Positions 7,003 to 59,300 of a stretch of DNA of 64,000 bases are shown here, piece by piece. The notes under the pieces are model-generated. The model did no database searches. It had not been told where the DNA came from and saw nothing but the letters and a program-made list of their open reading frames with translations. Source of the stretch: Octopus sinensis (taxonomy: Eukaryota). The stretch lies in assembly GCF_006345805.1 (NCBI RefSeq), contig NC_043001.1:109740001-109804000 (forward strand). The letters are read 5' to 3'. Position numbers and translations under genes: made by a program. Each line of letters opens with the position of its first letter. Position 1 is the stretch's first letter.

Positions 7003-7586
7003 CAAAGGCGGCGAGTTGGCGGAAACATCGTCTGCCGATACGTTCTGAGTTCAAATTCCGCCGAGGTCGACTTTGTCTTTCATCTTTTCGGGGTCGATAA
7101 ATTAAGTACCAGTTACGCACTGGGGTCGATATAATCGAGTTAGTTCGTTTGTCTGTCCTTGTTTGGCCCCCTCTGTGTTTAGCCCCTTGTGGGTAGTAAA
7201 GAAATATGTATTTCGTCTGTAGTTACGTTCTGAGTTCAAATCCGCCGAGGTCGACTTTGCCTTTCATCCTTTCGGGGTCGATAAATTAAGTACCAGTTAC
7301 GCACTGGGGTCGATATAATTGACTTAATCCGTTTGTCTGTCCTTGTTTGTTCCCACTGTGTGTAGCGGCTTGTGGGTAGTAAAGAAATAAGAAAAGTTAA
7401 CAGCCGGGCGAAATGCTTAGCAGTATTTCGTCTGTCTTTACGGTCTGAGTTCAAATTCCGCGAAGGTGAACTTTGCATTTCTCTCTTTCGAGGTCGATGA
7501 ATTAAGTACCAGTTGCATTCTGGCGTCGTTTTAATCGACTGGCCCCCTCTTTCAAAATTTCGGGCCTTGTGCCTAGAGTAGAAAAT
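7003..7586 (+). mobile_element. SINE family A, multi-subunit copy with 14-bp TSD
   Basis: Head ggcggcgag..gttcaaattcc and repeated central domain gtcgactttgcctttcatcctttcggggtcgataaattaagtaccag. TSD gttatatagtctcc at 6989-7002 and 7587-7600. Confidence 0.9.
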
Positions 7587-17829: not shown

Positions 17830-17866
<37 letters not shown>

Positions 17867-17870
<4 letters not shown>

Positions 17871-18465
17871 TATACACTCTGAGTATATTTAAACCTCTTA
17901 TAGGCATAGTTTTATCCAAGATAACCGAGCACACACACAAACGCATATACACACTCCCTCACATATGTAAGTATGTATGTATATATATCTTATAAAATTG
18001 ATAAAACTAGTAGATTCAAATTTGGGCGATAAGTGAAAAAACCATTGTGTTCAACAGAGGTTTGTACAGCGAAACATTTATTTGTTTCTGTCCAAAACAT
18101 TTTATCTTTCATTCCTCAAGTTCACTCCGCTGCATTTAACGATTTTTAATATATATATATATAATATATATATATATATATAATATATATTCATATACAC
18201 TCTGAGTATATTTAAACCTCTTATAGGCATAGTTTTATCCAAGATAACCGAGCACACACACAAACGCATATACACACTCCCTCACATATGTAAGTATGTA
18301 TGTATATATATCTTATAAAATTGATAAAACTAGTAGATTCAAATTTGGGCGATAAGTGAAAAAACCATTGTGTTCAACAGAGGTTTGTACAGCGAAACAT
18401 TTATTTGTTTCTGTCCAAAACATTTTATCTTTCATTCCTCAAGTTCACTCCGCTGCATTTAACGA

Positions 18466-18470
<5 letters not shown>
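17867..18470. repeat. Tandem duplication of a 281-bp unique segment between (TA)n tracts
   Basis: 17867-18147 and 18190-18470 appear identical. Confidence 0.95.
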
Positions 18471-18519
<49 letters not shown>

Positions 18520-18522
<3 letters not shown>

Positions 18523-20029
18523 GTAAATAGTAATAATAATTATAAGCTTAAATCTTACAAGCATTCACCGTGTGCTACATCACTGAAGCACTACCATCAC
18601 TGAGTTGTAAATATTATTCCTCCAACAATCTCTAGTATGCACTTGCCAAGTTTTCTTTATATCTGTTTTCTGTCACTGCTATCATGACATGTCTGGATTT
18701 GAAATAATGGGCTTATCATCTTCATCCAACTACACAAAACGTCTGAATTTGTGCCACCGTATTTCTTGTTTGTGCAGTCGTATACCACATGTAACCCAGT
18801 GGTCGAAATCTCCCTAGTGTACCCAATATATAAAGCCCAACGTAATCTTAACCACTATAATCTTCCTGATCATTTATTAATTTTATGAATAATTTACGAA
18901 CTTTTGTTAACTTAATATGGAATACGACACCAGTCTAGACTCAACCCAAGCTGAGTTTTTAACGTATGATAAGTGCCGGATTATTAAAACTTTATATATT
19001 TAAATCACTTGACATGCTTGGAGAGGCGAGCAGATAAGCGAAATAAATATTGTCTTCAATTTGACTGGGACTAATTTTTGAAATATTCTTTCGGACTGAA
19101 TCGATCTGAACAGCAATTGTAATAAAATAAAAAAAGCACTATAATATAATTTTATCATTTGTTTGTCGGTACTACACACCTATACCATGTAATATTAAAT
19201 TAACTTGTTGAAACACGATCACAGATACGAACGGAAATGAACTTATGCATAAAAAATATTATTCACTTGTTTAATCCACACATTGATGTATAAAGTGTTG
19301 ATTTAGACAGAAAAAAAGGAAAATACTACCGATAGCAATTGATAATATAACTCTCGTTTGTATATTATAAAATGGCTTCATGGTATTATTTGGGAAATAT
19401 AAAATTATATTTTCTTCTGAATATAATTGAATACCAAAAACACAAGTATTAGAAATCCATTACTGTTTTTTCTCTCTACATCGATGCAGTTTATTTATAT
19501 CACGTTATTATGTTGATAGTTGCTAAATGAAATAAATATTTGATGCATTTATATAACAAAGATGGATAGGATTTATTCAATAATTTAGTCTTCCAATACA
19601 AAATAAACAAAAAGGCAAAAGTCATTACAATAGTTACATTCCAAGGATTTCTCAACTTATGTGGAATTGTTGAATTTCATATATATTCGAGCATAATAGT
19701 TCTTTGAAATATATTTCTATGTATTGCGAATTTAAATGTTGTTCATATCCTGAGCGAGCTGCCTATATATAAGATCGAACTCATTCATGTTACAACCATG
19801 CACTAGTTTTTTTTGGGGTATGTACTCATTTACTCTTTTACTTGCGGCCATGCTGGGGCATCACCTTTAGTCGAGCCAATCAACCGCAGGACTTATTCTT
19901 CGTAAGCCTTGTACTTATTGTATCGGTCTCTTTTACCGAACCGCTAAGTTACGGGGCGCAAACACACCAACAAAGGTTGTCGAGTGATGGTGGGGACAAA
20001 CACAGACACAAAAACATATACGTACATAC

Positions 20030-20060
<31 letters not shown>

Positions 20061-21560
20061 CCGGTAAATAGTAATAATAATTATAAGCTTAAATCTTACA
20101 AGCATTCACCGTGTGCTACATCACTGAAGCACTACCATCACTGAGTTGTAAATATTATTCCTCCAACAATCTCTAGTATGCACTTGCCAAGTTTTCTTTA
20201 TATCTGTTTTCTGTCACTGCTATCATGACATGTCTGGATTTGAAATAATGGGCTTATCATCTTCATCCAACTACACAAAACGTCTGAATTTGTGCCACCG
20301 TATTTCTTGTTTGTGCAGTCGTATACCACATGTAACCAGTGGTCGAAATCTCCCTAGTGTACCCAATATATAAAGCCCAACGTAATCTTAACCACTATAA
20401 TCTTCCTGATCATTTATTAATTTTATGAATAATTTACGAACTTTTGTTAACTTAATATGGAATACGACACCAGTCTAGACTCAACCCAAGCTGAGTTTTT
20501 AACGTATGATAAGTGCCGGATTATTAAAACTTTATATATTTAAATCACTTGACATGCTTGGAGAGGCGAGCAGATAAGCGAAATAAATATTGTCTTCAAT
20601 TTGACTGGGACTAATTTTTGAAATATTCTTTCGGACTGAATCGATCTGAACAGCAATTGTAATAAAATAAAAAAAGCACTATAATATAATTTTATCATTT
20701 GTTTGTCGGTACTACACACCTATACCATGTAATATTAAATTAACTTGTTGAAACACGATCACAGATACGAACGGAAATGAACTTATGCATAAAAAATATT
20801 ATTCACTTGTTTAATCCACACATTGATGTATAAAGTGTTGATTTAGACAGAAAAAAAGGAAAATACTACCGATAGCAATTGATAATATAACTCTCGTTTG
20901 TATATTATAAAATGGCTTCATGGTATTATTTGGGAAATATAAAATTATATTTTCTTCTGAATATAATTGAATACCAAAACACACGTATTAGAAATCCATT
21001 ACTGTTTTTTCTCTCTACATCGATGCAGTTTATTTATATCACGTTATTATGTTGATAGTTGCTAAATGAAATAAATATTTGATGCATTTATATAACAAAG
21101 ATGGATAGGATTTATTCAATAATTTAGTCTTCCAATACAAAATAAACAAAAAGGCAAAAGTCATTACAATAGTTACATTCCAAGGATTTCTCAACTTATG
21201 TGGAATTGTTGAATTTCATATATATTCGAGCATAATAGTTCTTTGAAATATATTTCTATGTATTGCGAATTTAATGTTGTTCATATCCTGAGCGAGCTGC
21301 CTATATATAAGATCGAACTCATTCATGTTACAACCATGCACTAGTTTTTTTTTGGGTATGTACTCATTTACTCTTTTACTTGCGGCCATGCTGGGGCATC
21401 ACCTTTAGTCGAGCCAATCAACCGCAGGACTTATTCTTCGTAAGCCTTGTACTTATTGTATCGGTCTCTTTTACCGAACCGCTAAGTTACGGGGCGCAAA
21501 CACACCAACAAAGGTTGTCGAGTGATGGTGGGGACAAACACAGACACAAAAACATATACG

Positions 21561-21568
<8 letters not shown>
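18520..21568. repeat. Tandem duplication of about 1.51 kb between (TA)n tracts
   Basis: 18520-20030 vs 20061-21568. They differ by a few single-base homopolymer indels and about one substitution. Each copy ends in a SINE-B tail on the minus strand. Confidence 0.95.
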
Positions 21569-21599
<31 letters not shown>

Positions 21600-23320: not shown

Positions 23321-23970
23321 AGTTACGCACTGGGGTTGATATGATCGACTTAATACGTTTGTCTGTCCTCTCTGCGTTTATCCCCTTGTTGGTAGTAAAG
23401 AAATAGGTATTTCGTCTGCCGCTAGGGTTCTGAGTTCAAATTCGGCCTAGGTCGACTTTGCTTTTCATCCTTTCGGGGTCGAATATATAAGTACCAGTTA
23501 CGGACTAGGGTCGATATAACCGACTTAATTCGTCTGTCTGTCCTTGTTTGTCCTCTCTGTGTTTAGCCCCTTGTGGGCAATAAAGAAATAAGAAACGTTA
23601 GCACGCTGGACGAAATGCTTCGCGGTATTTCGTCTGCCGCTAGGGTTCTGAGTTCAAATTCCGCCGAGGTAGACTTTGCCTTTCATCCTTTCGGGGTCGA
23701 TTAAATAAGTACCAGTTACGCACTAGGTCGATATAATCGACTTAATCCATTTGTCTTTCCTTGTTTGTCCTCTCTGTGTTTAGCACCTTGTGGGGAGTAA
23801 AGAAATAGGTATTTCGTCCGTCTTTTCGTACTAAGCTCAAATTCCGCCGAGGTCGACTTTGATTTTTATCTCTTCCGGGTCGATAAATTAAGTATCAGTT
23901 GCGTTCTGTGGTCAATCTAATCGACTGGCCCACGCCCCCAAAATTTTGGGCCTTGTGCCTAGAATAGAAA
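23320..23970 (+). mobile_element. SINE family A, multi-subunit copy
   Basis: Three to four repeats of the central domain, ending gccttgtgcctagaatagaaaag. Confidence 0.9.
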
Positions 23971-24073
23971 AGTACGGAAATAGGGTGAAGATAGAGAAGC
24001 ACAGTACTCCCAACGCCCTTCTTTATATAAGTACGTATAAAGATGTGCATTCGTGCGCCTGGATTTGTGTATG

Positions 24074-24483: not shown

Positions 24484-25194
24484 TTATGTAAGAAATCGAC
24501 GTGTGTTATGTTGAAAATCAGAAGCTCAATCGTTACATTCACAGCTCTTTACGATGGATACCAACTGAACCAACAGCATTTCAATCAACCTGCAACTGTT
24601 CTCACAGTTAAGTTTTTACTACAATGTGTTAGGAATAAAATATATAAAACTTCTCATTTTCAGAAATAACTTTTGAAGTGTGTTAATGCATTGTGTCGCG
24701 CCACTGTCTGGATTTTAAATGTTCTATAGTTACCAATATTTCAGGAAATCAATGTAAAAATAACAAAAAACAGTTAGATTAAATGCATAATGTATACGCA
24801 CGAAAGTAAAATGTAATAAAAGCGATTTTTTTTCAGTGTATAGAAATTGATTCCAAATGCATTTGTCACGATATAATATTTTGCTTGCAGGCAACGCAAA
24901 CTTTACATGAAATAGGTTTTTAAAGTGAAACCTGATAATTCCTAAATGCTTGTAATGGAAAATATTGTATACATCAAGTGTACTTTATATCATTTAACGA
25001 TAGTTACTATTTAACTAGTATAATTTCCCATCTTCACATTTATGATTGTTCTTGAAAGACAGACATGAAGTTTAGCAAAGGAAAATGCATATTTATTAAT
25101 AAAACTGAAGAGACAAGCATAGATAGGTACGGTGTGCTGAGTTAAAAGTTTTATCAAATTTTCGAAGTTATTTGCTTTATTTGTCAAGTTACAA

Positions 25195-25870
25195 CAAAAG
25201 CGGACTAGCATTCAAATAGAGGCTATCGTGTGGCACCGTCTGAATCCAACTTTCTGCCATTTCTTTGATGCCGCCCTGATACCAGTTCTTGTCTTTTGAG
25301 GCGTAAAACCTCTTTACTGACGCTGCCGCCTCTTCTTGGTTGATGAATCGTTGCAAGTTCAGGAAGTGAACCGTGGATCGGAACAAATAATAATCCGTTA
25401 GTTCCGTACTATTTACTGGGCGTGATATCAGTTTGATTCGCTCAGTTTTCTGGGAATTATTCCGGGTAGGTCGAACGATATGTAGTCTTGCATTGTCTTA
25501 CTGCCGAAGAGACCACCTTCCGCTAACCAACGCTGAGTATTTTTGTCGCGCAATGGCATACGTCCATGAGATGTCGAGTTCCCTTGATATTCCGATTGCT
25601 ACTCGCTGAATTTGCCTTTATGGCTTGAAGAATGTCCTTGAAGTCCACGGTTTTATGCCTAATCGACATTGCCTGATCATCGAGGTTCTTGCAACCCGAA
25701 GAAATTTTCTTGAATCATCTGGTTATTGTACTGCGAATAACCTTTACCTTTCGAACAACAAATGGTTTTGGTTGCTCCTGCGGCGATATGGCCCTGTTCG
25801 AACTCGTAAGTCATAAGTTTCCGAATTAGACTGCGTTAGACGTTAATCTGGGCGGTTTTCAAATCACACA
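25195..25870 (-). mobile_element. Mariner (DD34D-type) transposase remnant, internally deleted
   Basis: N-terminal IRKLMTYEFEQGHIAAGATKTIC. C-terminal DYYLFRSTVHFL..RFINQEEAAASVKRFYASKDKNWYQGGIKEMAESW. Confidence 0.8.
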
Positions 25871-26037
25871 TTGAATGAAGCAAGTTACAGCGTGTCAGCA
25901 CATACAACCAACACGATGCTACCAACATCATCGGTTATGTCACGTGATATACATGCCGTAAAGTAGCAGATATGTAAATATTGCAAAACTTTTGACTCAC
26001 ATCAATATAAATCCGTAAAGAGTAAAAAAATCTTTTC

Positions 26038-26410
26038 TACTCTAGGCACAAGGCCTGACATTTTAGGGGAGGAGGCCAGTCGATTAGTACGCAACTGGTA
26101 CTTAATTCATCGACCTCGAAAAGGTAAGTCGACCTCAGCGGAAGTTGAACTCAGAACGCAGCGGCGGACGAAATACCTATTTCTTTACTACCCACAAGGG
26201 GCTAAACACAGAGGGGACAAACAAGGACAGACACACATATTAAGTCGATTATATCGATCCCAGTGTGTAACTGATACTTATTTAATCGACCTCGAAAGGA
26301 TGAAAGGCTAAGTCGACCTTGGCGGAATTTGAACTCAGAACGTAACGGCAGACGAAATACAGCTACGCATTTTGTCCGGCGTGCTAACGTTTCTGCCAGC
26401 TCGCCGCCTT
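26038..26410 (-). mobile_element. SINE family A
   Basis: Reverse complement of the family A head and central domain. Confidence 0.9.
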
Positions 26411-29391: not shown

Positions 29392-29856
29392 GTGTGTGTG
29401 TGTGTGTGTGTGCGTGCGTGCGTGTGCGTGTATGTACCTTATGCAATCAACGATGTTTTGCGATTATATGCAATTACTTCCTAAATACTAATTCGGTTAT
29501 ATATTTCTTACGACATCAGAAATCATTTCTCACATTAATGAACTGACACAACTGCTCATGAAGAGGGGGAATAACCGACTGGTCTAAACTAGTCCATGAT
29601 TTATTGAGAAACTTGGTAATAGCGACTCTGTCAAGGTATAGCATAACGTAATAACGTAGGAGGGATAACCTATTACGATGTCATCTAATATTTAGTGCCT
29701 TCCATACAAACTTTGAAATGGTTTAAAATCCACTCCACGTTGGACTGTCGTGACCTAAGCATAAACAAAGAGAGAATTTGTAAATAGTCGTACTGGATAA
29801 ATGAAAAAGCCATCCACATAAAGTTTGTTAGAGCGGAACTGCAGCCATGATGAATA

Positions 29857-30276
29857 CCTATTTCTTTACTACCCACAAAGGGGTAAACACAGAGGGAACA
29901 AACAAGGACAGACAAACGGATTAAGTCGATTATATCGACCCCAGTGCGTAGTTGGTACTTATTTAATCGACCCCAAAAGGATGAAAGGCAAAGTCGACCT
30001 CGGCGGAATCTGAACTCAGAACGTAGCGGCAGACGAAATACGTATTTCTTTACTACCCACAAGGGGCTAAACACAGAGGGGGAAAATAAGGACAGACAAA
30101 CGGATTAAGTCGATTATATCGAGCCCAGTGCGTAGTTGGTACTTATTTAATCGACCCCGAAAGGATGAAAGGCAAAGTCGACCTCGGCGGAATTTGAACT
30201 CAAATTGTAACGGCAGACGAAATACAGCTACGCATTTCGCCCGGTGTGCTAACGTTTCTGCCACCTCGCCGCCTTA
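29857..30276 (-). mobile_element. SINE family A dimer
   Basis: Two central domains. Imperfect TSD agccatgatgaatacc / agccataaggaatacc. Confidence 0.9.
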
Positions 30277-34431: not shown

Positions 34432-34961
34432 TTGGGTTGTCTGGAAAGTTCGTGCCGATTTTTAAAGGAAAGAAAAAGGTCAATAAATACTTGCCATTAT
34501 ATTATTAATCAGCCAAATATGAACCATTATGTTGCACAATGCGTCTCTATCTTTCCTTTAACTTGAAAATACCCTCTTCCCAGAGTTGAGGGTTTTCATG
34601 GCAAAGAATTCATCAAGGTATCTTTTTACGTCATCCAAGGAATTGAAATTTTTACCATTAAGACTATTCTGCAGAATAAGTGGAAATCCGAAGGAGCAAT
34701 ATCTGGTGGATATGGAGGGTGGGGAAACACATCCCAGCCAGCTGCAGCAATATTTGTCTGGTTCCCAAAGCATCAAGTGCCGAAAATGAATTTTCTTATC
34801 TTCCATTTTAAAGGGTTACAAAATGAACACAGGTTATAGGAACAAAAACTTTGCTCTAAATGGAGGTGTAGTCAAATCCTATTTTATGGACTCAGCCATG
34901 TTCTAAAATAAATCGAAAGGTAACCTACTATAAATTGGCACGAACTTGCCAGACAACTCAA
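34432..34961 (-). mobile_element. Non-autonomous mariner with 30-bp TIRs
   Basis: ttgggttgtctggaaagttcgtgccgattt / aaattggcacgaacttgccagacaactcaa. MEDKKIHFRHLML is fused to HPPYPPDIAPSDFHLF..LQNSLNGKNFNSLDDVKRYLDEFF. Confidence 0.9.
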
Positions 34962-39014: not shown

Positions 39015-39950
39015 ACCGGGCGAAATGTCTAGCGGTATTTCGTCTGCCGTTACGTTCTGAGTTCAAATTCTGCCGAGGTACACATTGCCTTTCATCCTTT
39101 CGGGGTAGATAAACTAAGTACCAGTTACGCACTGGGGTCGATGTAATCGACTTAATCCGTTTGTCTGTCCTTGTTTGTCCCCTCTGTGTTTAGCACCTTG
39201 TGGGAAGTAAAAAATAGGTATTTCATCTGCCGCCACGTTCTGAGTTCAAATTCCGCCGAGGTCGACTTTGTCTTTCATCCTTTCGGGGTCGATTATGTAA
39301 GTACCAGTTATGCACTGGGGTCGATATAATCGACTTAATCCGTTTGTCTGTCCTTGTTTGTCCCCTCTGTGTTTAGCACCTTGTGGGAAGTAAAAAATAG
39401 GTATTTCATCTGCCGCCACGTTCTGAGTTCAAATTCCGCCGAGGTCGACTTTGTCTTTCATCCTTTCGGGGTCGATTATGTAAGTACCAGTTATGCACTG
39501 GGGTCGATATAATCGACTTAATCCGTTTGTCTGTCCTTGTTTGTTCCCTCTGTGTTTAGCACCTTGTGGGAAGTAAAAAATAGGTATTTCATCTGCCGCC
39601 ACGTTCTGAGTTCAAATTCCGCCGAGGTCGACTTTGTCTTTCATCCTTTCGGGGTCGATTATGTAAGTACCAGTTATGCACTGGGGTCGATATAATCGAC
39701 TTAATCCGTTTGTCTGTCCTTGTTTGTTCCCTCTGTGTTTAGCACCTTGTGGGAAGTAAAAAATAGGTATTTCATCTGCCGCCACGTTCTGAGTTCAAAT
39801 TCCGCCGAGGTCGACTTTGTCTTTCATCCTTTCGGGGTCGATTATGTAAGTACCAGTTATGCACTGGGGTCGATATAATCGACTTAATCCGTTTGTCTGT
39901 CCTTGTTTGTCCCCTCTGTGTTTAGCTCCTTGTGGGTAGTAAAGAAATAG
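39015..39950 (+). repeat. Tandem array of five 183-bp SINE-A subunits
   Basis: Units start at 39035, 39218, 39401, 39584 and 39767. The last four are nearly identical. Confidence 0.95.
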
Positions 39951-40678
39951 GTATGTAGCATGCCTTGTTTCAGTGTAAAACTTTATGCAGGTAGCATTCT
40001 AGAGAAAATAGCTGACAGAGGTTGTGTACAAAGTATGATGTATGTTGTCGGCGGGGAAACCAATAGGAGGTGATTCGAGTACATTGATCTATTTTAGTTG
40101 GTGTAGGTAGATTGTTGGACACTTCAAAGAAGCAAAATATTGTAGTATAGATATATTTGATAATTTCCTTTCAACTTCCTTTTCCCCAATATATTTTCAT
40201 TGACTAGACCTTTTCTTCATGTAATTTATAAATATTTAATTTTCTTATGAATTGTCTGTCGTTAATATTTAATGCATACATTTTAGTTATGTATTCGTCT
40301 CCACATTGTCTCAATACAAAGGCTAGCTCATTTTCTCCTTCTAAACAAGTTTTTCGAGAACAATATTTTAAACTAGGACAGAGTATATGAATTACGTTAT
40401 TTTTAGAATTTTCTGGTACTAAAAGACACTTTAAATATTCTATGCCTCGCGTATATAATATTTGTTGTCGTCTATTGTGGTCTTGTTTTATTACTTTTTC
40501 TCCATCCTGACTATATATATATAACTTATTCATTCTTGCATTATTCAAGCAATTTCTTAACTTATGTTTATATAGTTTTGCATTTTAGCACAATAATGTA
40601 CCATAAGAGGTAGCACACAAATTTTCAGATGATCGAAGTAGGTCAATGTGTTGATTCTATAATGTTAAAATAACATTT

Positions 40679-41348
40679 GGATCTTTACCTTTTGACCTAC
40701 AGATTTTAAAATAATTTTTTGTAACTAAACACTTTCAAACTTCGGACACTGGTAGAATGTGTCATATAAAACATCTTTTACTCTTAGCATTTTTGAGAAA
40801 AAAACTTATATTTACGAAGTTATTTCACGTTAAAGTTGTAGTATTTGGATAATTTCAACCAATCAATGACGTGTATTCAGCTGAATAAAATTACTGCTGT
40901 GGTTTGTCAACAACAACTATCAGTGGTGTATGTTTCGTTTGTCAATGTTATTTATGACATCGTTCGTGCATTTGTACTGGATTTAGCTTTAAGGTTTTAG
41001 GGTTAGGTTTTCAGGGTTAGGGTTAGGTTTTTAAGGTTTGGGTCTTAGGGTCAGGTTTTGGGTTTTAGGGTTAAGGTTTTAGTGTTAAGATCAGGCGAAA
41101 AATATACCGCCGGAAGTTGTTATTGACAAACAATGGCAGTAATTTTAGCTGAATACACGTTATTGATTGGTTAAAATTACCGAAATACGACAACTTTAAC
41201 ACGAAATAACTTCGTAAATAAAAACCTTTCTCAAAAACACTAAGAGTAAAAGATGTTTTATATGACACATTCTACCATTGTCCGAAGTTTGAAAGTGTTT
41301 AGTTACAAAAAATTATTTTTTTAATCTGTAGGTCAAAAGGCAAAATCC
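40679..41348. mobile_element. MITE with about 235-bp TIRs and a degenerate (TTAGGG)-like core
   Basis: Arms about 40679-40918 and 41112-41348 are complementary (ggatctttaccttttgacctacag / ctgtaggtcaaaaggcaaaatcc). Core at 40989-41090. Confidence 0.9.
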
Positions 41349-41924: not shown

Positions 41925-42845
41925 TTTGGACTATTACCAATTTGGTAATAGTACAATGGATAGAGATCTGGTGAATTAGGTAACTAAAAAGTTAGGGATT
42001 ATGTGTTCATGAAAATTTTCAGCCATCTATTTCTGTGTTACTAGAGCCATGTGTGATAGTGCAGAATCCTACTGAAACACATATGACCTTCCATTGTATA
42101 CACTGTCTATACAAGGCATAACAATTATTTCCAGGATCTCAATGTAAAAGTTAACCCTAAGGTCTTGTGGAAAGAAGTAAGGAGGCATCACATGTCCTGC
42201 ATTGCTGACACCCCCTAAAATCATGATAGTTGCAGGAAATTTTGTATGCATAACACTTGGAACTTCAGAAGAGATTGCACATAACCATCTGTCATTTCTT
42301 CTGTTAACATTTTTTCTCGTTTGAGAAAAAAACAAATCAAATCTTCTTCTGCTGGAATTTTCAGTTTGCTTAAGAGCCTTTTAGATCTGATGCAGTGATT
42401 TTCTTTTGCTTTTTCTGACAAATTGACTTTTCATCATCATCTAAGACAACATTTCCGACTGTTTCTTCTGACAAATGGAGATTCTTTGCAATTGACCTCA
42501 TGGACTTTCTGAGATTGTGATCAATGGTTTGTTGAACTTGTTGGATAAATTCAAGTGTTCTGATGATTTCAGAGCGTTTAGAATGCTTTTTATGTTTTTT
42601 ATACTTGTGATACGTTCGAACTTCAGTCTCTACCTCCTTACAAGATCTGGCAACTTTCAAAAATTGTGATGTTTCTAAATCGCTATGCTCAGCCTTTATA
42701 ACCACAATAACAGCATGCCTCTCCATTTCTTGTGTAAGCTGTGGGTCTGCTATTATAATTTCCTGAAACAAGGATTATACAGAGTTAGCAAAAAATGCAG
42801 AAACGACTGAAAAAAGGCATGTCCTCAAATACCTTTAGCACCCAC
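41925..42845 (-). mobile_element. Decayed maT/DD37D-like Tc1/mariner transposase
   Basis: ORF pieces ..RKSMRSIAKNLHLSEETV.., MSEKAKENHCIRSKRLLSKLK, TKFPATIMILGGVSNAGHVMPPYFFPQDLRVN..YVFQ*DSA. Related to 2375-3270. Confidence 0.85.
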
Positions 42846-50544: not shown

Positions 50545-52145
50545 TAGTTTTATTTTTATAGCGTGCTTTCACTTCACTACCGAGCGCAGCTCTGTGTGCC
50601 TTGGGTATGTGCTGTGATTTGTTGTGATGCTCTGTATTGCAATTTTCTGTATGTTATATGTGTGTTTAAGTCCTGGCGTTTTTGTTGTGTATTTGTCTGA
50701 ATATTTTTTTTATAATGCCTAATGCACCTACTATGATAGGAATTGTTTCTGTTTTCAGATTCCACATTCTGGTTACCTCTATTTCCAGGTCTTTGTATTT
50801 TAAAAGTTTCTCCATTTCTTTTAGAGACACGTTGTCATCTGCCGGTATTCATACATCAATTAGAAAGCATTTTTTTTCTTCGCGATCTCTGACAACTATA
50901 TCTTAATTGGCCTTAATTTCTCTATCTGTGTATATCGGCATATCCCAGAGTATGGTTGCTTTCTCGTTTTCTGTGACCTTTTCTGGTGTGTGCCTATACC
51001 ATCTTTTTTCTGTTGTTATTCCATAATGTTGGCATAGCTTCCAGTGTATGTAGGTTCCAACTCTGTCATGTCTGTGAATATATTCCTTCTTAGCCAGGAC
51101 TGGGCAGCCAGAGATAATATGATTTATTGTTTCTTGTTCATCTCCACATATTCTGCAGTTACTTGTTATATTTCTTTTCATTACATGTTTTTGGTAATTT
51201 CTGGTGGGGAGGCTTTGGTCTTGTGCTGCAATTAAAAATCCCTCTGTCTCTGCTTTGAGTCCTGAGCTTCTCAACCATTTCTTGGATCTTTCTTTGTCTA
51301 TTTCTTTTGCGTTTAGTTTAGTCCAGTATTTACCATGAAGGGGCTTTTCTTGCCATCGTTTTATCATGGTTCGTTGCTGTTCTATTTTTAGTTTGGATTT
51401 CATTTGTTTTATAGCTTTTGTTGTTTCTTCTTCTTCTTCTTCTTCTTCTTCTTCTTCTTCTTCTTCTTCTTCTTCTTCTTCTTCTTCTTCTTCTCTTTCT
51501 TCATATTTGTTAGGTGGTATGATTTCTTGTTTGTATTTGTCAGCTTCCTTAAATACTGAGAACAGTTTTTTGTTTTGCTCGTGTTTTGCCGCTATTTGTA
51601 TCAGTTTTCCTTCCTTCTGAAGTAGATATTTTTGCAGTCCTATGGTGGTTATTTTATAGTAGTTTTCCAGCTGTATAAGGCCTCCACCACCATCTATACG
51701 TTGTATATATAGCCTTTCTATGCCAGATTTTGGGTGATGCATCCTAGATCCTGTCATTATTTTTCTTGCTTTCATATCTATTTTGGTCAGTTCATTTAGT
51801 ATCCAGTTAAGGATATTGTAGCTGTAAATTATAACTGGGACGGCTAAAGTGTTGATACCTATTATCTTGTTTTTAGCATTGAGCTCTGTTTTTAGTGTTG
51901 ATCTAACTCGTCTATAATATTCTTTTTTTTATTTGCTCTTTCATTTGTGTGTGTTGTGTCTTATCTAGTTCATGGATTCCTAAGTATTTGTAAGTTTGGC
52001 TTTGGTCTAATTCTTTTATTTCATTGGTTTTATCTAGTGTGATATTGCTACTCTTAACTAGTTTTCCTCTTTTCAGGGTTACTTTGGCGCATTTCTCTAA
52101 TCCAAATTTCATATCTATTTCTTTGTTAAATCCATGAACGGTCTG
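50545..52145 (-). mobile_element. R4/Dong-like LINE, 5'-truncated (end of RT, CCHC knuckle, RLE nuclease)
   Basis: MKFGLEKCAKV..YKYLGI; WLRSSGLKAETEGFLIAAQDQSLPTRNY; CRICGDEQETINHIISGC..RHD; NRPDIVVRD..CFLIDV. Frameshifts and stops present; TAA repeats on both sides. Confidence 0.95.
51425..51495. repeat. (TTC)n microsatellite inside the LINE ORF
   Basis: In frame on the minus strand as poly-Glu. Confidence 0.95.
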
Positions 52146-53915: not shown

Positions 53916-54333
53916 AAAATGTGGATTTTATGTTCTGGCTTGGCGACTGGTTAGAGAAATAAGGGTTTGACAGGAGAGATAGAAAGAAGGTGAGACAATA
54001 AAGTATTGGTGCCTATGTGTATATGTCATAATGTGTAAGTGTGTGTCTGTTTATATGGGCTATTGACTGACGTGTGTGTGTGCGTTTGTAATGTGTAGGT
54101 ATGTGAATAATGGTGAGTGTGCGGATTATGGTGGGTGGGTGTATAGATGAGGGTGAGTGGAGTGGTGTGGGGTGGTGTGATGGTGTGTGGTGGTGTGGGG
54201 TGGCATGATGTGGTGTCGTGGTGTGTGGTGTGGTGTCGTGTGGGGGTGTATATATATGCATATATAGATAGATACATATATATGTTTGTATATATATTTA
54301 TATATGTACATATATACATATATAAATATACAT

Positions 54334-54366
<33 letters not shown>

Positions 54367-54526
54367 AACATATAAGAGGTAACCATCATACGATACATGG
54401 CACGCTAGAAGGAATAGCCAAAATCCAAACAACTATTAGGGATAAATTTCGATGGGAATGAATAATAAAAACATTTACCATGTATCTCCTGGACTATGGT
54501 ATCTGAATCAATATTAGCAAATAAAA

Positions 54527-57500
54527 AATTTACATCAGTGGACAGTTGATCGAATTTTCACTAGTGGACAGTTGATCGAATTTACACAAGTGGACAGTTG
54601 ATCGAATTGGCACAAGTAGACAGTTGATCGAATTTACACCAGTGGACAGTTGATTAAATTTACACAAGTGGAAAGTTGATCAAATTTGCGCTAGTGGACA
54701 GTTGATCGAATTAGCACAAGTAGACACTTGATCGAATTTACACCAGTGGACAGTTGATTGAATTTACACAAGTGGAAAGTTGATCAAATTCTCCCTAGTG
54801 GACAGTTGATCGAATTTTCGTTAGCGGTTAGTTGATCGTATTTACACCAGTGGACAGTTGATCGAATTTTCACTAGTGGTAAGTTGATCGAATTTACACC
54901 AGTTGACAGTTGATCGAAATTTTGTCAGCGGTCAGTTGATCGAATTTACACCAGTGGACAGTTGATCGAATTTACGCTAGTGGACAGTTGATCGAATTGA
55001 GACCAGTGGAAAGTTGATCAAATTTGCGCTGGTGGTCAGTTGATCGAATTTTCGCCAGAAGTCAATTGATCGAATTAACTCCAGTGGACAGTAGATCGAA
55101 TTTTCGCTAGTGGTCATTTGATAGGATTTACACCAGAAGACGGTTGACCGAATTTTCACCAGTGGACAGTTGATCGAATTTTCTCATGTGGATAGTTGAT
55201 CGAATTTTCGCAAGTGGACAGTTGATTGAGTTTTCGCTAGTGGTCAGTTGATCGAATCTACACCAGTGGACAGTTGATCGAATTTTCGCTTTTGGACAGT
55301 TGATCGAATTTTCTATAGTGGACAGTTGATCGAATTTTCCCAAGTGGACAGTTGATCGAGTTTTCGCTAGTGGTCAGTTGATCGAATCTACACCAGTGGA
55401 CAGTTGATCGAATTTTCGCTTGTGGACTGTTGATCGAATTTTCTATAGTGGACAGTTGATCGAATTTTTGCTAGAGAATAGTTGATCGAATTTACACTAG
55501 TGGAAAGTTGATCGAATTTTCCCAAGTGGACAGTTGATCGAGTTTTCGCTAGTGGTCAGTTGATCGAATCTACACCAGTGACAGTTGATCGAATTTTCGC
55601 TTGTGGACTGTTGATCGAATTTTCTATAGTGGACAGTTGATCGAATTTTTGCTAGAGGATAGTTGATCGAATTTACACTAGTGGAAAGTTGATCGAATTT
55701 TCGCTAGTGGACAGTTGATCGAATTTCCATAAATGGACAGTTGATCGAATTTTTGCTAGTGGACATTTGATCGAATTTAGCGCAGTGGAAAATTGATCAA
55801 ATTTGCGCTGGTGGTCATTTGATCGAATTTACACCAGAAGACAGTTGACCGAATTTTCACCAGTGGACAGTTGATCGAAATTTCTGATGTGGACAGTTGG
55901 TCGATTTTCGCAAGTGGACAGTTGATCGAATTTTCTATAATGGACAGTTGATCGAATTTTTGCTATTGGACAGCTGATCGAATTTTCTGTAGGGGATAGG
56001 TGATGGCTGATTGAATTTAGACAAGTGGACAGTTGATCGAATTTTCTCTAGTGGACAGTTAATCGAATATTCGTCAGCGAACACTTGATCGAATTTACAC
56101 AGAGTTGAATTTTCTCTAGTAGACAGTTGTTCTAATTTTCTCTAGTGGACAGTTGATCGAATTTTTGCTAGTGGACAGTTGATCGAATTTACACCGGTGA
56201 ACAGTTGATCGATTTTCGCTAGTGGACAGTTGATCGAATTTACACCGGTGAGCAGTTGATCGATTTTCGCTAGTGGACAGTTGATCGAATTTAGACCAGT
56301 GGACAGTTGATCGAATTTTCATCAGCGGACAGTTGATCGAATTTACATCAATGGACTGTTGATCGAATTTTCTCTATTGGAGATTTGATCGAATTTTTGC
56401 TAGTGGACAGTTAATCGAATATTCGTCAGCGAACAGTTGATCGAATTTACACAGAGTTGAATTTTCTCTAGTGGACAGTTGTTCGAATTTTCTCTAGTGG
56501 ACAGTTGATAGAATATTCTCCAGTGGACAGTTGATCGAATTTTCGCTAGTAGACAGTGGACAGTTGATCGAATTTACACCTGTGGACAGTTGATCAAATT
56601 TTCGTCAGCGGACATTTGATCGAATTTCCTCTAGTGGACAGTTGATCGAATTTACACCAGTGTACAGTTGATCGAATTTTCGCTAGTAGACAGTTGATCG
56701 AATTTTCGCCAGTGGACACTTGATCGAATTTCCTCTAGTGGACAGTTGATCGAATTTACACCAGTGTACAGTTGAGCGAATTTCCGCTAGTGGACAATTG
56801 ATCGAATTTGCACAAGTGGACAGTTGATCGAATTTACAACAGTGGACTATTGATCGAATTTTCGCTAGTAGACAGTTGATCGAATTTTCGCCAGTGGACA
56901 CTTGATCGAATTTTCTCCAGTGGACAGTTGATCGAATTTTCGCTAGTAGATCGAATTTAGACCAATGGACAGTTGATCGAATTTTCGTCAACGGACATTT
57001 CATCGAATTTACATCCATGGAGAGTTGATTGAATTTACGTCAATGGACAGTTGATCGAATTTTCTCTAGTGGACAGTTGATCGAATTTTCTCCAGTGGAC
57101 AGTCGTTCAATTTTCGCTAGTGGAGAGTTGATAAAATTTTCGCTCGTGGACAGTGGACAGTTGATCGAATTTACACCTGTGGACAGTTGATCGAATGTTT
57201 GTCAGCGGACATTTGATCGAATTTACATCCATGCAGAGTTGATCGAATTTACATCAATGGACATTTGATCGAATTTCCGCTAGTGGACAATTGATCGAAT
57301 TTGCACAAAAAGACAGTTGATCGAATTTACCACAGTGGACTGTTGGTCGAATTTTCGCTAGTAGACAGTTGATCGAATTTTCGCCAGTGGACAGTTGATC
57401 TATTTTACACTAGTGGACAGTTGATCGAATTTACACCAGTAGACAGTTGATCGAATTGTCGCCAGTGGACAGTTGATCGAATTTACACCAGTGGACAGTT

Positions 57501-58115
57501 GATCGAATTTGAGTTACTGGACAGTTGATCGAATTTTCGCCAGTGGAAAGTTGATCGAATTTACACCAGTGGACAGTTGATCGAATTTGCTTTAGTGGAC
57601 AGTTGATCGAATTTTCGGCAGTGGATAGTTGATCGAATTCGCGCAAGTAGACATTTGATCGAATTTACACCAGTAGACAGTTGATAGAATTTTCGTTGGT
57701 GGACAAATTATCGAATTTGCACAAGACAGTTAATCGAATTTACACCAGTCGAAGTTTCACAAGTGGACAGTTGATCGAATTTTCTCAAATGAGCAGTTGA
57801 TCGAATTTAGACAAGTGGACAGTTGATCGAATTTGCACAAGTAGACAGTTGATCGAATTTGCACAAGTAGACAGTTGATCGAATTTTCACTAATGGACAG
57901 TTGATCAAATTTTCGTAGGTGGACAATTGATCAAATTTGCACAAGTAGACAGTTGATCGAATTTTCACTAGTGGACAGTTGATCAAATTTTCGTAGGTGG
58001 ACAATTGATCGAATTTGTACAAGTAGACAGTTAATCGAATTTACACCTGTGGACAGTTGATCGAATTTGTGCTAGTGGACAGATGATCGAATTTTCGCTA
58101 ATGGACAGTTGATCA
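54527..58115. repeat. 26-bp satellite, about 138 copies (gtggacagttgatcgaattt plus a variable 6-mer)
   Basis: Unit length verified across consecutive copies. Local higher-order periods of 78, 104 and 182 bp. Confidence 0.97.
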
Positions 58116-58133
58116 GATGAAACATATAAATAT

Positions 58134-58343
58134 GAGGCAATCCAGGATTTGCCCCGTGCTTATATATTACAATTTTTCAAATCCACCGCGCAAGCGCATA
58201 TTTTTATCGGCTGTAAATTAAATAATGCCAGACTACGAAAATTTGTCAAAAATTATCTATAATTAATAATAACAGTGTAAGAAAAATGTGCGCTGGTGTG
58301 GAAGATTTAATATATAAACACGGGGCACATGCTGGATTGCCTC
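58134..58343. mobile_element. 210-bp MITE nested at the satellite end
   Basis: gaggcaatccaggatttgccccgtgcttatatatt / aatatataaacacggggcacatgctggattgcctc inverted termini. Confidence 0.8.
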
Positions 58344-58669
58344 CTAACTATATGTTTAATCTATGCGTACGTGTTCATTTAGACTCCACCTAGCAAATGA
58401 TTTTATTTATAAGTATTCAGTTAGAAACCTTTGTCCAGGGTATACATGGTCAATATTTTTACTTTTCATTCCCTTAGAACGTTATCCCTAATAGTGGTTT
58501 GGATCTTGGCTATTCCTACTAGCATGCCAGGTTTCCTATGATAGTTACCTCTTATGTTTTTAAATGTACACTGTATTTATATGAAAAATATATAGTCAAT
58601 TGACTAAATTTTCTATACGCTAAGCCAATGGTAGTAAACATTTCCAGAATTTTTTCTTACCCTGATATT

Positions 58670-59300
<631 letters not shown>

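What the first reader, a model, noticed from the sequence alone, without database searches (positions are those of the whole stretch)
54372..58555. 3.6-kb satellite that appears to have grown inside an inverted-repeat (transposon-like) element
Seen: the whole 26-bp array sits between two 122-bp arms that are 85% identical inverted copies with no gaps. No transposase is present. Established: some non-autonomous DNA transposons carry internal tandem repeats that seed satellite DNA. Inference: this is a mobile satellite cassette, and the same arms should bracket arrays of other lengths elsewhere in the genome.
Basis: partly seen in the sequence, partly recalled or inferred. Interest (0 to 1): 0.75.

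Follow-up and report, generated by a model that had tools for sequence, protein, structure and literature searches.

The report
Minisatellite array inside inverted-repeat element relic
A 3.6-kb run of about 138 copies of a 26-base unit really does sit between two 155-base inverted arms in an animal genome, and it looks like an old, decayed non-autonomous DNA transposon whose interior ballooned into a tandem array, which is a known kind of structure; whether it ever moved could not be tested here.

Summary
A head-to-tail 26-bp array of about 138 units lies at 54527-58115, all on the + strand. It is bracketed by ungapped inverted arms at 54372-54526 and 58401-58555. No ORF with homologues lies inside.

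Evidence from the sequence itself favours one inverted-repeat unit whose interior grew in place:
- The left arm abuts the array to the base, and no array lies outside the arms.
- Neither arm has termini or inverted repeats of its own.
- The array contains multi-unit duplications up to 97.7% identical, younger than the arm divergence (K2P 0.21).
- An older unit variant is pushed to both array edges.

A 240-bp hairpin element is nested near the right arm.

Only a TA or AT dinucleotide is compatible as a target-site duplication, and it is ambiguous. No second copy of the arms or the 26-mer exists in the window or in any reachable collection, and the source genome is not in them. Mobility, copy number and an autonomous partner are therefore untested.

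Verdict: probably a fossil tandem-repeat-carrying terminal-inverted-repeat (TIR) element. That would be a new member of a known kind, of modest interest.

The parts
54372..54526 (+). Left inverted arm (candidate left TIR), 155 nt. It begins ATAAGAGGTAACC and ends AAATAAAA directly against the first repeat unit.
   Evidence: 127/155 identical to the reverse complement of the right arm, no gaps, E = 2.6e-40. It has no internal direct or inverted sub-repeats and no Rfam match of note.
54527..58115 (+). Tandem array of a 26-bp unit, about 138 units. The consensus is AATTT[ACACC/TCGCT/TCTCT/GCACA]AGTGGACAGTTGATCG. All units point the same way. A 21-nt core is conserved and positions 6-10 are hypervariable.
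   Evidence: Unit subtypes were counted. Multi-unit internal duplications at offsets 78, 104, 130, 181/182, 352 and 493 bp reach 97.7% identity over 130 bp. CACA-type units are enriched at both array ends (permutation p = 0.01).
58120..58357 (.). Nested hairpin element resembling a MITE (miniature inverted-repeat transposable element), about 240 bp. Its termini are AAACATATAAATATGAGGCAATCCAGGATTTGCCCCGTG and the complement.
   Evidence: it matches its own reverse complement at 70% over 261 nt; the single-strand DNA fold is -56.5 kcal/mol, z = -10.2, with 0 of 200 shuffles as good. One search gives only sub-threshold hairpin-type Rfam hits.
58358..58400 (.). Short unique internal segment between the nested hairpin and the right arm.
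   Evidence: resemblance to one inverted repeat unit is weak and not significant (322 of 2000 shuffles score as well; in-register 8/16, p = 0.05).
58401..58555 (-). Right inverted arm (candidate right TIR), 155 nt. It ends GGTTACCTCTTAT.
   Evidence: as for the left arm. It has no inverted sub-repeat of its own.
54373..54374 (.). Candidate TA target-site duplication; its partner is at 58553-58554. It cannot be told apart from the outermost bases of the inverted repeat, because TA is its own complement.
   Evidence: Read. No direct repeat of 3-9 bp flanks the arms.

Best explanation
This is the fossil of a non-autonomous cut-and-paste DNA transposon with long (about 155-bp) terminal inverted repeats and no coding capacity.

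Its interior expanded in place into a 3.6-kb array of a 26-bp unit. Growth was by replication slippage and unequal exchange in blocks of 3 to about 19 units. A small hairpin element later inserted near the right arm.

Steps shown:
- the inverted arms;
- the array confined exactly between them;
- the absence of genes;
- in-place multi-unit duplications that are younger than the divergence of the arms;
- the nested hairpin.

Steps inferred:
- the arms were once bound by a transposase supplied in trans;
- the target was a TA dinucleotide, which would point to the Tc1/mariner/pogo kind;
- the element arrived with few units;
- it is now immobile, given 18% arm divergence and a 4.2-kb length.
For: - The arm match is far beyond chance, ungapped, and sharply bounded at both outer ends.
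- The left arm meets the first unit to the base, and no unit lies outside the arms in 64 kb. Independent insertions at both array edges would be a very unlikely coincidence.
- Neither arm is a hairpin or carries its own inverted termini, so an arm is half of something, not a whole small element.
- There is no larger inverted duplication in the flanks.
- Identity tends to be highest at the outer tips: 88% in the outer 50 nt against about 75% in the inner 55 nt. This is a trend only.
- The array has 130-bp blocks 94-98% identical at offsets of 3, 4, 5, 7, 13.5 and 19 units, while average unit identity is about 78% and arm K2P is 0.21.
- The same rare unit variants sit at both array edges, as expected if the centre expanded.
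- A TA dinucleotide flanks AGAGGT...ACCTCT, and mariner relics occur in the same window.
- The kind is documented (PMC3879986, PMC4079207, PMC6947457, PMC8268682).
Against: - Only one copy is known. There is no second arm, solo arm or stray unit in the window or in any reachable collection.
- The TA or AT duplication is palindromic and lies next to a TA/CA microsatellite, so it proves nothing.
- No autonomous partner was found. The one mariner relic in the window that keeps its TIRs (34432-34961) has different termini.
- The unit is not detectably derived from arm sequence.
- Arm differences are 18 transversions to 10 transitions, which is not a typical neutral decay spectrum.
Confidence: 0.55

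Rival explanations
1. A local, non-mobile inverted duplication, for example from template switching or a fold-back repair event. This would create a 155-bp palindrome with a spacer, and the 26-bp array then arose and grew in the spacer. No transposition was ever involved.
For: Only one copy is seen anywhere. There is no convincing target-site duplication. In-place array growth is equally expected under this reading.
Against: The identity boundaries are sharp at both outer ends, with an AGGT-type tip after TA. Nothing in the flanks is duplicated. A second hairpin element with similar tips (AAACATATA..GAGGYAAYC) sits inside, which hints at a shared transposon-type terminus.
Confidence: 0.2
2. 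A composite. A pre-existing or captured tandem array is flanked by two ends or copies of a cut-and-paste element, and the outer ends could mobilise the whole. This is the 'two flanking transposons' model of PMC6947457, Figure 5A.
For: The review describes this route. The inner ends of the arms show no relation to the unit.
Against: Each arm lacks an inverted repeat or a second end of its own. The arms are therefore single ends, which is the same thing as one element with an array inside. No array remnants lie outside the arms.
Confidence: 0.1
3. Coincidence. Two independent insertions of an unrelated dispersed repeat, such as a SINE with an A-rich tail (both arms end AAATAAAA on the inner side), landed in opposite orientation at the two edges of an ordinary minisatellite.
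For: The window is dense in SINE-like repeats, and inverted SINE pairs 2-2.6 kb apart do occur, for example 23504-23972 against 26032-26360. Both inner arm ends are A-rich.
Against: The arm sequence occurs nowhere else in 64 kb, while the SINE-like family occurs many times. The left arm abuts the array to the base, and the right arm lies about 40 bp away once the nested hairpin is discounted. There is no tRNA or other RNA-family signal in the arms.
Confidence: 0.05

Closest known systems
Tandem-repeat-containing MITEs of molluscs and insects (pearl/CvA of oysters, DTC84 of the clam Donax trunculus; later assigned to non-autonomous Helentrons). Sources: PMC3879986, PMC8268682.
   Same: It is non-coding. 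A central tandem array is held in a 'cassette' of flanking sequences that carry inverted repeats. The host is probably a mollusc too; that is my recollection of the SINE-like repeat, not a tool result.
   Different: Those elements carry up to about 5-6 core repeats of roughly 150-180 bp, linked to a microsatellite module. They have only short inverted repeats and a putative AA target. Here the array has about 138 units of 26 bp, there is no internal microsatellite module, the symmetrical arms are 155 bp, and there is no AA duplication.
Tetris of Drosophila virilis, a foldback-type non-autonomous element whose internal tandem repeats (TIR-220) grew into kb-size satellite-like arrays. Source: PMC4079207.
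   Same: It is a non-autonomous inverted-repeat element in which kb-size arrays originated inside the element. A second, smaller element possibly shares the terminal motif, as DAIBAM does with Tetris (weak).
   Different: In Tetris the tandem repeats are part of the TIRs and so occur in both orientations. Here all 121 core matches are on one strand and lie between the arms, not within them. The unit is 26 bp rather than 220 bp.
Tc1/mariner-type MITEs (Stowaway-like) and long-TIR Tc1-like elements.
   Same: A TA dinucleotide flanks the inverted repeat. After TA the tip reads AGAGGT, like the NNAGGT tips of mariner TIRs (my own knowledge). Mariner relics are present in the same window.
   Different: The TA cannot be separated from the inverted repeat. 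The termini differ from the only mariner relic in the window that keeps its TIRs (TTGGGTTGTCTGG...). There are no paired direct repeats inside the arms. At 4.2 kb it is far above MITE size.
Xstir/T2-MITE of Xenopus and SGM-IS of Drosophila guanche (MITE-derived tandem repeats, listed in PMC6947457, Table 1).
   Same: They link a small inverted-repeat element to a tandem array.
   Different: In those cases the whole MITE, or a large part of it, is the repeated unit. Here the unit shows no detectable similarity to the arms.

Membership tests
Non-autonomous TIR DNA transposon carrying internal tandem repeats | Terminal inverted repeats with sharp outer boundaries | tested here: met
   155 nt, 82% identity, ungapped, E = 2.6e-40; identity starts abruptly at ATAAGAGGTAAC on both sides.
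Non-autonomous TIR DNA transposon carrying internal tandem repeats | Target-site duplication flanking the TIRs | tested here: inconclusive
   Only TA (54373-4 / 58553-4) or AT fits. Both are palindromic and cannot be told from the TIR tip. No direct repeat of 3-9 bp is present.
Non-autonomous TIR DNA transposon carrying internal tandem repeats | Multiple dispersed copies in the genome (evidence of past mobility) | not testable with these tools
   There is no second copy in the 64-kb window. The source genome is absent from every collection reachable here.
Non-autonomous TIR DNA transposon carrying internal tandem repeats | No transposase gene inside | tested here: met
   The only ORFs are minus-strand read-throughs of the repeat, at most 118 aa, with no homologue.
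Non-autonomous TIR DNA transposon carrying internal tandem repeats | An autonomous partner sharing the termini | not testable with these tools
   In the window, the mariner relic with TIRs at 34432-34961 has unrelated termini. TAAGAGGTAACYATCATA occurs only at the two arms.
MITE in the strict sense | Small size (below roughly 0.8 kb) and high copy number | tested here: not met
   The unit spans 4,184 bp (54372-55555... precisely 54372-58555). Copy number is unknown.
pearl / DTC84 / Helentron-associated tandem-repeat elements | Few (up to about 5-6) core repeats of about 150-180 bp, joined to a microsatellite module, with short inverted repeats and an AA (TT) target (PMC3879986, PMC8268682) | tested here: not met
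   The unit is 26 bp in about 138 copies. There is no microsatellite inside the arms, the arms are 155 bp, and there is no AA duplication.
Foldback elements (FB, Galileo, Tetris) | Tandem sub-repeats that are part of both long TIRs, hence present in both orientations | tested here: not met
   All 121 core matches are on the + strand. The arms contain no sub-repeats.
Satellite DNA in the strict sense | Long arrays at many loci, or a high genomic share | not testable with these tools
   There is one 3.6-kb array in the window. By unit size (26 bp) and length this locus is a minisatellite.

The most novel reading that the evidence does not exclude
The arms belong to a still-uncharacterised long-TIR, TA-targeting transposon family of a probable cephalopod or other mollusc genome. 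That family would carry the 26-bp repeat around the genome as a cassette, with different array lengths at different loci, and the small nested hairpin element would share its terminal motif and transposase. The pattern of a conserved 21-nt core and a variable 5-nt block would then reflect binding of a protein to each unit rather than mere subfamily history.
Probability: 0.12. Interest if true: 0.5.

Novelty: new member of a known kind. Interest (0 to 1): 0.3.

Why it matters
If the arms prove to be a real, multi-copy family, this locus would be a clear snapshot of a tandem array being born and growing inside a transposon. The element's ends are still recognisable, and the order of events can be read from the sequence: arms first, then array growth, then a nested insertion. 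That is useful for the long-standing question of how satellites are seeded and dispersed, in an animal group where such elements are barely described. As a single unverified copy it is ordinary repeat annotation.

Tried and rejected
- Searching for other copies. The 20-nt core and a 20-base degenerate arm motif were run against the collections. The core was run on viral, metagenome and prokaryote contigs. The arm motif AGGAATAGCCAARATCCAAAC was run on viral contigs. The arm motif CCAAACNACTATTAGGGATAA was run on metagenome and prokaryote contigs. The only result was one hit in a Bacteroidota MAG, about the number expected by chance for 20 bases in 596 Gb.
- Translating the open minus-strand frame of the array (118 aa) and searching 5.8e9 predicted proteins for other arrays called as ORFs gave no hit.
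- Identifying the genome failed. An exact look-up of a LINE ORF found nothing. Its homologues include one Logan contig (SRR7158634, 93% aa, 87% nt) and one contig of GCA_024449705.1 (73% aa, 75.5% nt). Neither accession appears in the paper library. Sequence strings of the unit, the arm and the SINE-like repeat are not printed in any held paper.
- Deriving the unit from the arms did not succeed. Local alignments of the unit consensus to either arm, and to the unique segment beside the right arm, are not better than shuffles. In-register continuation of the inverted repeat into the first unit is 8/16, p = 0.05.
- Reading the arms as RNA-derived (SINE) was rejected. There are no tRNA genes and no Rfam hit above threshold; the sub-threshold hits are microsatellite or hairpin look-alikes.
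- No larger palindrome exists around the locus.
- A BLAST self-comparison of the array returned nothing usable and was replaced by a diagonal scan.
- I ran no further search on the 33-aa arm translations. The source genome is evidently not in that database, so a hit was very unlikely.
Full report
**What is there**

The window is eukaryotic. It is about 34% G+C and crowded with (TA)n, (CA)n and (TTA)n microsatellites. It also carries a SINE-like 183-bp repeat, mariner relics, a LINE fragment and an interstitial TTAGGG-like tract. It has no tRNA genes and no Rfam families above threshold.

At 54527-58115 lies a head-to-tail array of a 26-bp unit. A fuzzy segmentation finds 136 units plus a few fragments: 126 of exactly 26 bp and 8 small irregular junctions. 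The 21-nt core AGTGGACAGTTGATCGAATTT has 121 matches at 3 or fewer mismatches. All are on the + strand, all lie inside the array, and none is expected by chance.

**The arms**

The sequence 54372-54526 and the reverse complement of 58401-58555 align without gaps. BLAST gives E = 2.6e-40, and a binomial estimate over all position pairs of the window gives about 5e-36.

Identity begins abruptly at ATAAGAGGTAAC on both sides. It tends to fall from the outer tips (88% in the first 50 nt) to the inner ends (about 75% in the last 55 nt); this is a trend only. K2P distance between the arms is 0.21, with 10 transitions and 18 transversions.

Neither arm contains an inverted or direct sub-repeat. Neither occurs anywhere else in the window. 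The flanks hold no larger inverted duplication.

**The interior**

The left arm ends AAATAAAA and the first unit follows at the next base.

On the right, the array ends at 58115. It is followed by a ~240-bp element (58120-58357) that is almost a perfect hairpin. It matches its own reverse complement over 261 nt at 70% identity. Its single-strand DNA fold is -56.5 kcal/mol, z = -10.2, with 0 of 200 shuffles as good. About 40 unique bases then separate it from the right arm.

The hairpin's tips (AAACATATAAATATGAGGCAATCC) resemble the outer element's tips (AAACATATAAGAGGTAACC / AAACATAAGAGGTAACT). I noticed this after the fact and treat it as a hint only.

The only ORFs inside the arms are minus-strand read-throughs of the repeat, at most 118 aa. 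The plus strand is closed by the TGA in the conserved core. These ORFs have no homologue. 'No transposase' is therefore correct.

**How the array is built**

Positions 1-5 and 11-26 of the unit are 82-100% conserved. Positions 6, 8 and 10 each carry two or three common bases. These bases are linked into subtypes: TACACC 29, TTCGCT 22, TTCGCC 12, TTCTCT 10 and TGCACA 8. TRF scores periods of 52 and 78 above 26.

Average unit-to-unit identity is about 78% at every lag. The array nevertheless contains blocks of 100-220 bp that repeat at offsets of 78, 104, 130, 181/182, 352 and 493 bp. Their 130-bp windows are 93-97.7% identical, and 89% of the array lies in some block at 90% identity or more. 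So the array grew where it is by duplication of several units at a time. Some of that growth is much younger than the 18% divergence of the arms.

Units of the CACA type cluster at both ends of the array: 10 of 16 lie within the first 10 or last 12 units (permutation p = 0.01). The left-end block matches right-end blocks at about 90%. This is what central expansion pushing older units outward would leave.

**One unit or a coincidence?**

Several facts argue against two independent insertions of a dispersed repeat at the edges of an ordinary minisatellite:
- No unit lies outside the arms.
- One arm touches the array to the base.
- The other arm is 40 bp away once the nested hairpin is set aside.
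- The arms are not complete small elements in themselves.
- The arm sequence is absent from the other 60 kb, although the window's common repeat families recur many times.

Inverted pairs of the common SINE-like repeat do occur by chance in this window, for example 23504-23972 against 26032-26360, so I checked this rival explicitly.

I cannot exclude a one-off local inverted duplication with an array in its spacer. No second copy is known and the target-site duplication is not decisive.

**Target-site duplication and superfamily**

No direct repeat of 3-9 bp flanks the arms, which argues against hAT, Mutator, PIF/Harbinger, piggyBac and similar superfamilies. A TA (54373-4 and 58553-4) or an AT fits. 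Both are palindromic, so they merely extend the inverted repeat, and the left flank is a TA/CA microsatellite.

After TA the tip reads AGAGGT, which recalls the NNAGGT tips of mariner TIRs; this rests on my own knowledge. Mariner relics are present in the window. However, the one that keeps its TIRs (34432-34961, TTGGGTTGTCTGG...) has unrelated ends.

**Origin of the unit**

I could not derive the 26-bp unit from the arms or from the unique segment beside the right arm. Local alignments are no better than shuffles. In-register continuation of the inverted repeat into the first unit is 8/16, p = 0.05.

It cannot be done with these tools.
- The core 20-mer and arm motifs are absent from the viral, metagenome and prokaryote collections, apart from one chance-level hit.
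- The translated array finds nothing among 5.8e9 proteins.
- The genome of origin is evidently not held. A LINE fragment that should have many close paralogues has a single hit at 90% amino-acid identity or more, a 990-bp Logan contig that is 87% identical in DNA. An exact look-up of that LINE ORF found nothing.
- The accessions and sequence strings are not in the paper library.

I suspect a cephalopod or other mollusc, from the TTAGGG-type tract and my recollection of the SINE-like repeat. That is not a tool result.

**Comparison with what is known**

Non-autonomous elements carrying tandem repeats, and satellites that grew from them, are well documented:
- DTC84 and the pearl group in bivalves, now tied to Helentrons (PMC3879986, PMC8268682).
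- Tetris in Drosophila virilis, where kb-size arrays originated inside the element (PMC4079207).
- Many others listed in PMC6947457.

The present locus works like these but is not a member of either named group. It fails the pearl/DTC84 definition, which requires few long units, a microsatellite module, short inverted repeats and an AA target. It fails the foldback definition, in which the repeats lie within both arms.

A long-TIR, possibly TA-targeting element with a very long array of a very short unit would be a new member of the known kind 'tandem-repeat-carrying TIR element'.

**Verdict**

The most likely reading (about 0.55) is an old, now immobile, non-autonomous TIR transposon whose interior expanded in place. 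The main rival (about 0.2) is a non-mobile local inverted duplication. Interest is modest (0.3): the structure is real and neat, but it is of a known kind and rests on a single copy.

Noticed in passing
window 58120-58357: A ~240-bp near-perfect hairpin (MITE-like) element is nested between the array and the right arm. Its tips (AAACATATA..GAGGCAATCC) resemble the tips of the outer arms (AAACAT(AT)AAGAGGTAACC). No target-site duplication is visible, and there is no other copy in the window.
   Followed up: partly
window 39034-39954; also 7028-7389 and 29853-30225: A 183-184-bp SINE-like unit (…GAGTTCAAATTCCGCCGAGGTCGACTTTGCC…) that is dispersed all over the window also occurs as short tandem arrays. 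One has 5 copies at 97% identity, and two have 2 copies at 90-92%. There was no Rfam match.
   Followed up: partly
window 18500-21580: A ~1.54-kb segment is duplicated in tandem at 99-100% identity. Just upstream, a 323-bp unit is repeated 2.1 times at 98% (17834-18515). Either the duplications are very recent or this is an assembly issue.
   Followed up: partly
window 40989-41089: An interstitial telomere-like tract (TTAGGG / TTTTAGGG variants). It argues for an animal with TTAGGG-type telomeres rather than an arthropod.
   Followed up: no
window 34432-34961: An internally deleted mariner-type element of ~530 bp with 33-bp TIRs (TTGGGTTGTCTGGAAAGTTCGTGCCGATTTTTA, 88% complementary). Further mariner-like ORF fragments lie at about 2409-2882, 25192-25497 and 42072-42774. 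They were recognised by eye; Pfam gave nothing at E <= 0.01 except a sub-threshold helix-turn-helix hit (E = 2.9e-4) at 42373-42774.
   Followed up: partly
window 23504-23972 and 26032-26360: Long inverted matches (56-139 nt, 78-92% complementary) between repeat copies 2.0-2.6 kb apart, around a mariner relic. This shows that inverted pairs of common repeats arise by chance in this genome.
   Followed up: partly
window 50906-51928 (minus strand): A LINE reverse-transcriptase C-terminal fragment with a zf-RVT domain, interrupted by a (GAA)n-encoded run of glutamates. Its closest relatives are a Logan contig (SRR7158634, 93% aa) and GCA_024449705.1 (73% aa).
   Followed up: partly
window 54157-54243 and 58672-59294: A G-rich (GTGGT)n tract and a TA/CA microsatellite lie immediately left of the left arm. 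A 620-bp (TA)n tract starts 115 bp right of the right arm. Whether the element landed in, or seeded, simple repeats is unknown.
   Followed up: no
window 54527-58115: Within the 26-bp unit, one CpG (positions 25-26, in TCGAA) is kept in 112 of 126 units. The other CpG position (7-8) is split between CG, CA and CT. The conserved core also contains CAGTTG (a Myb/E-box-like hexamer) and GATC.
   Followed up: no
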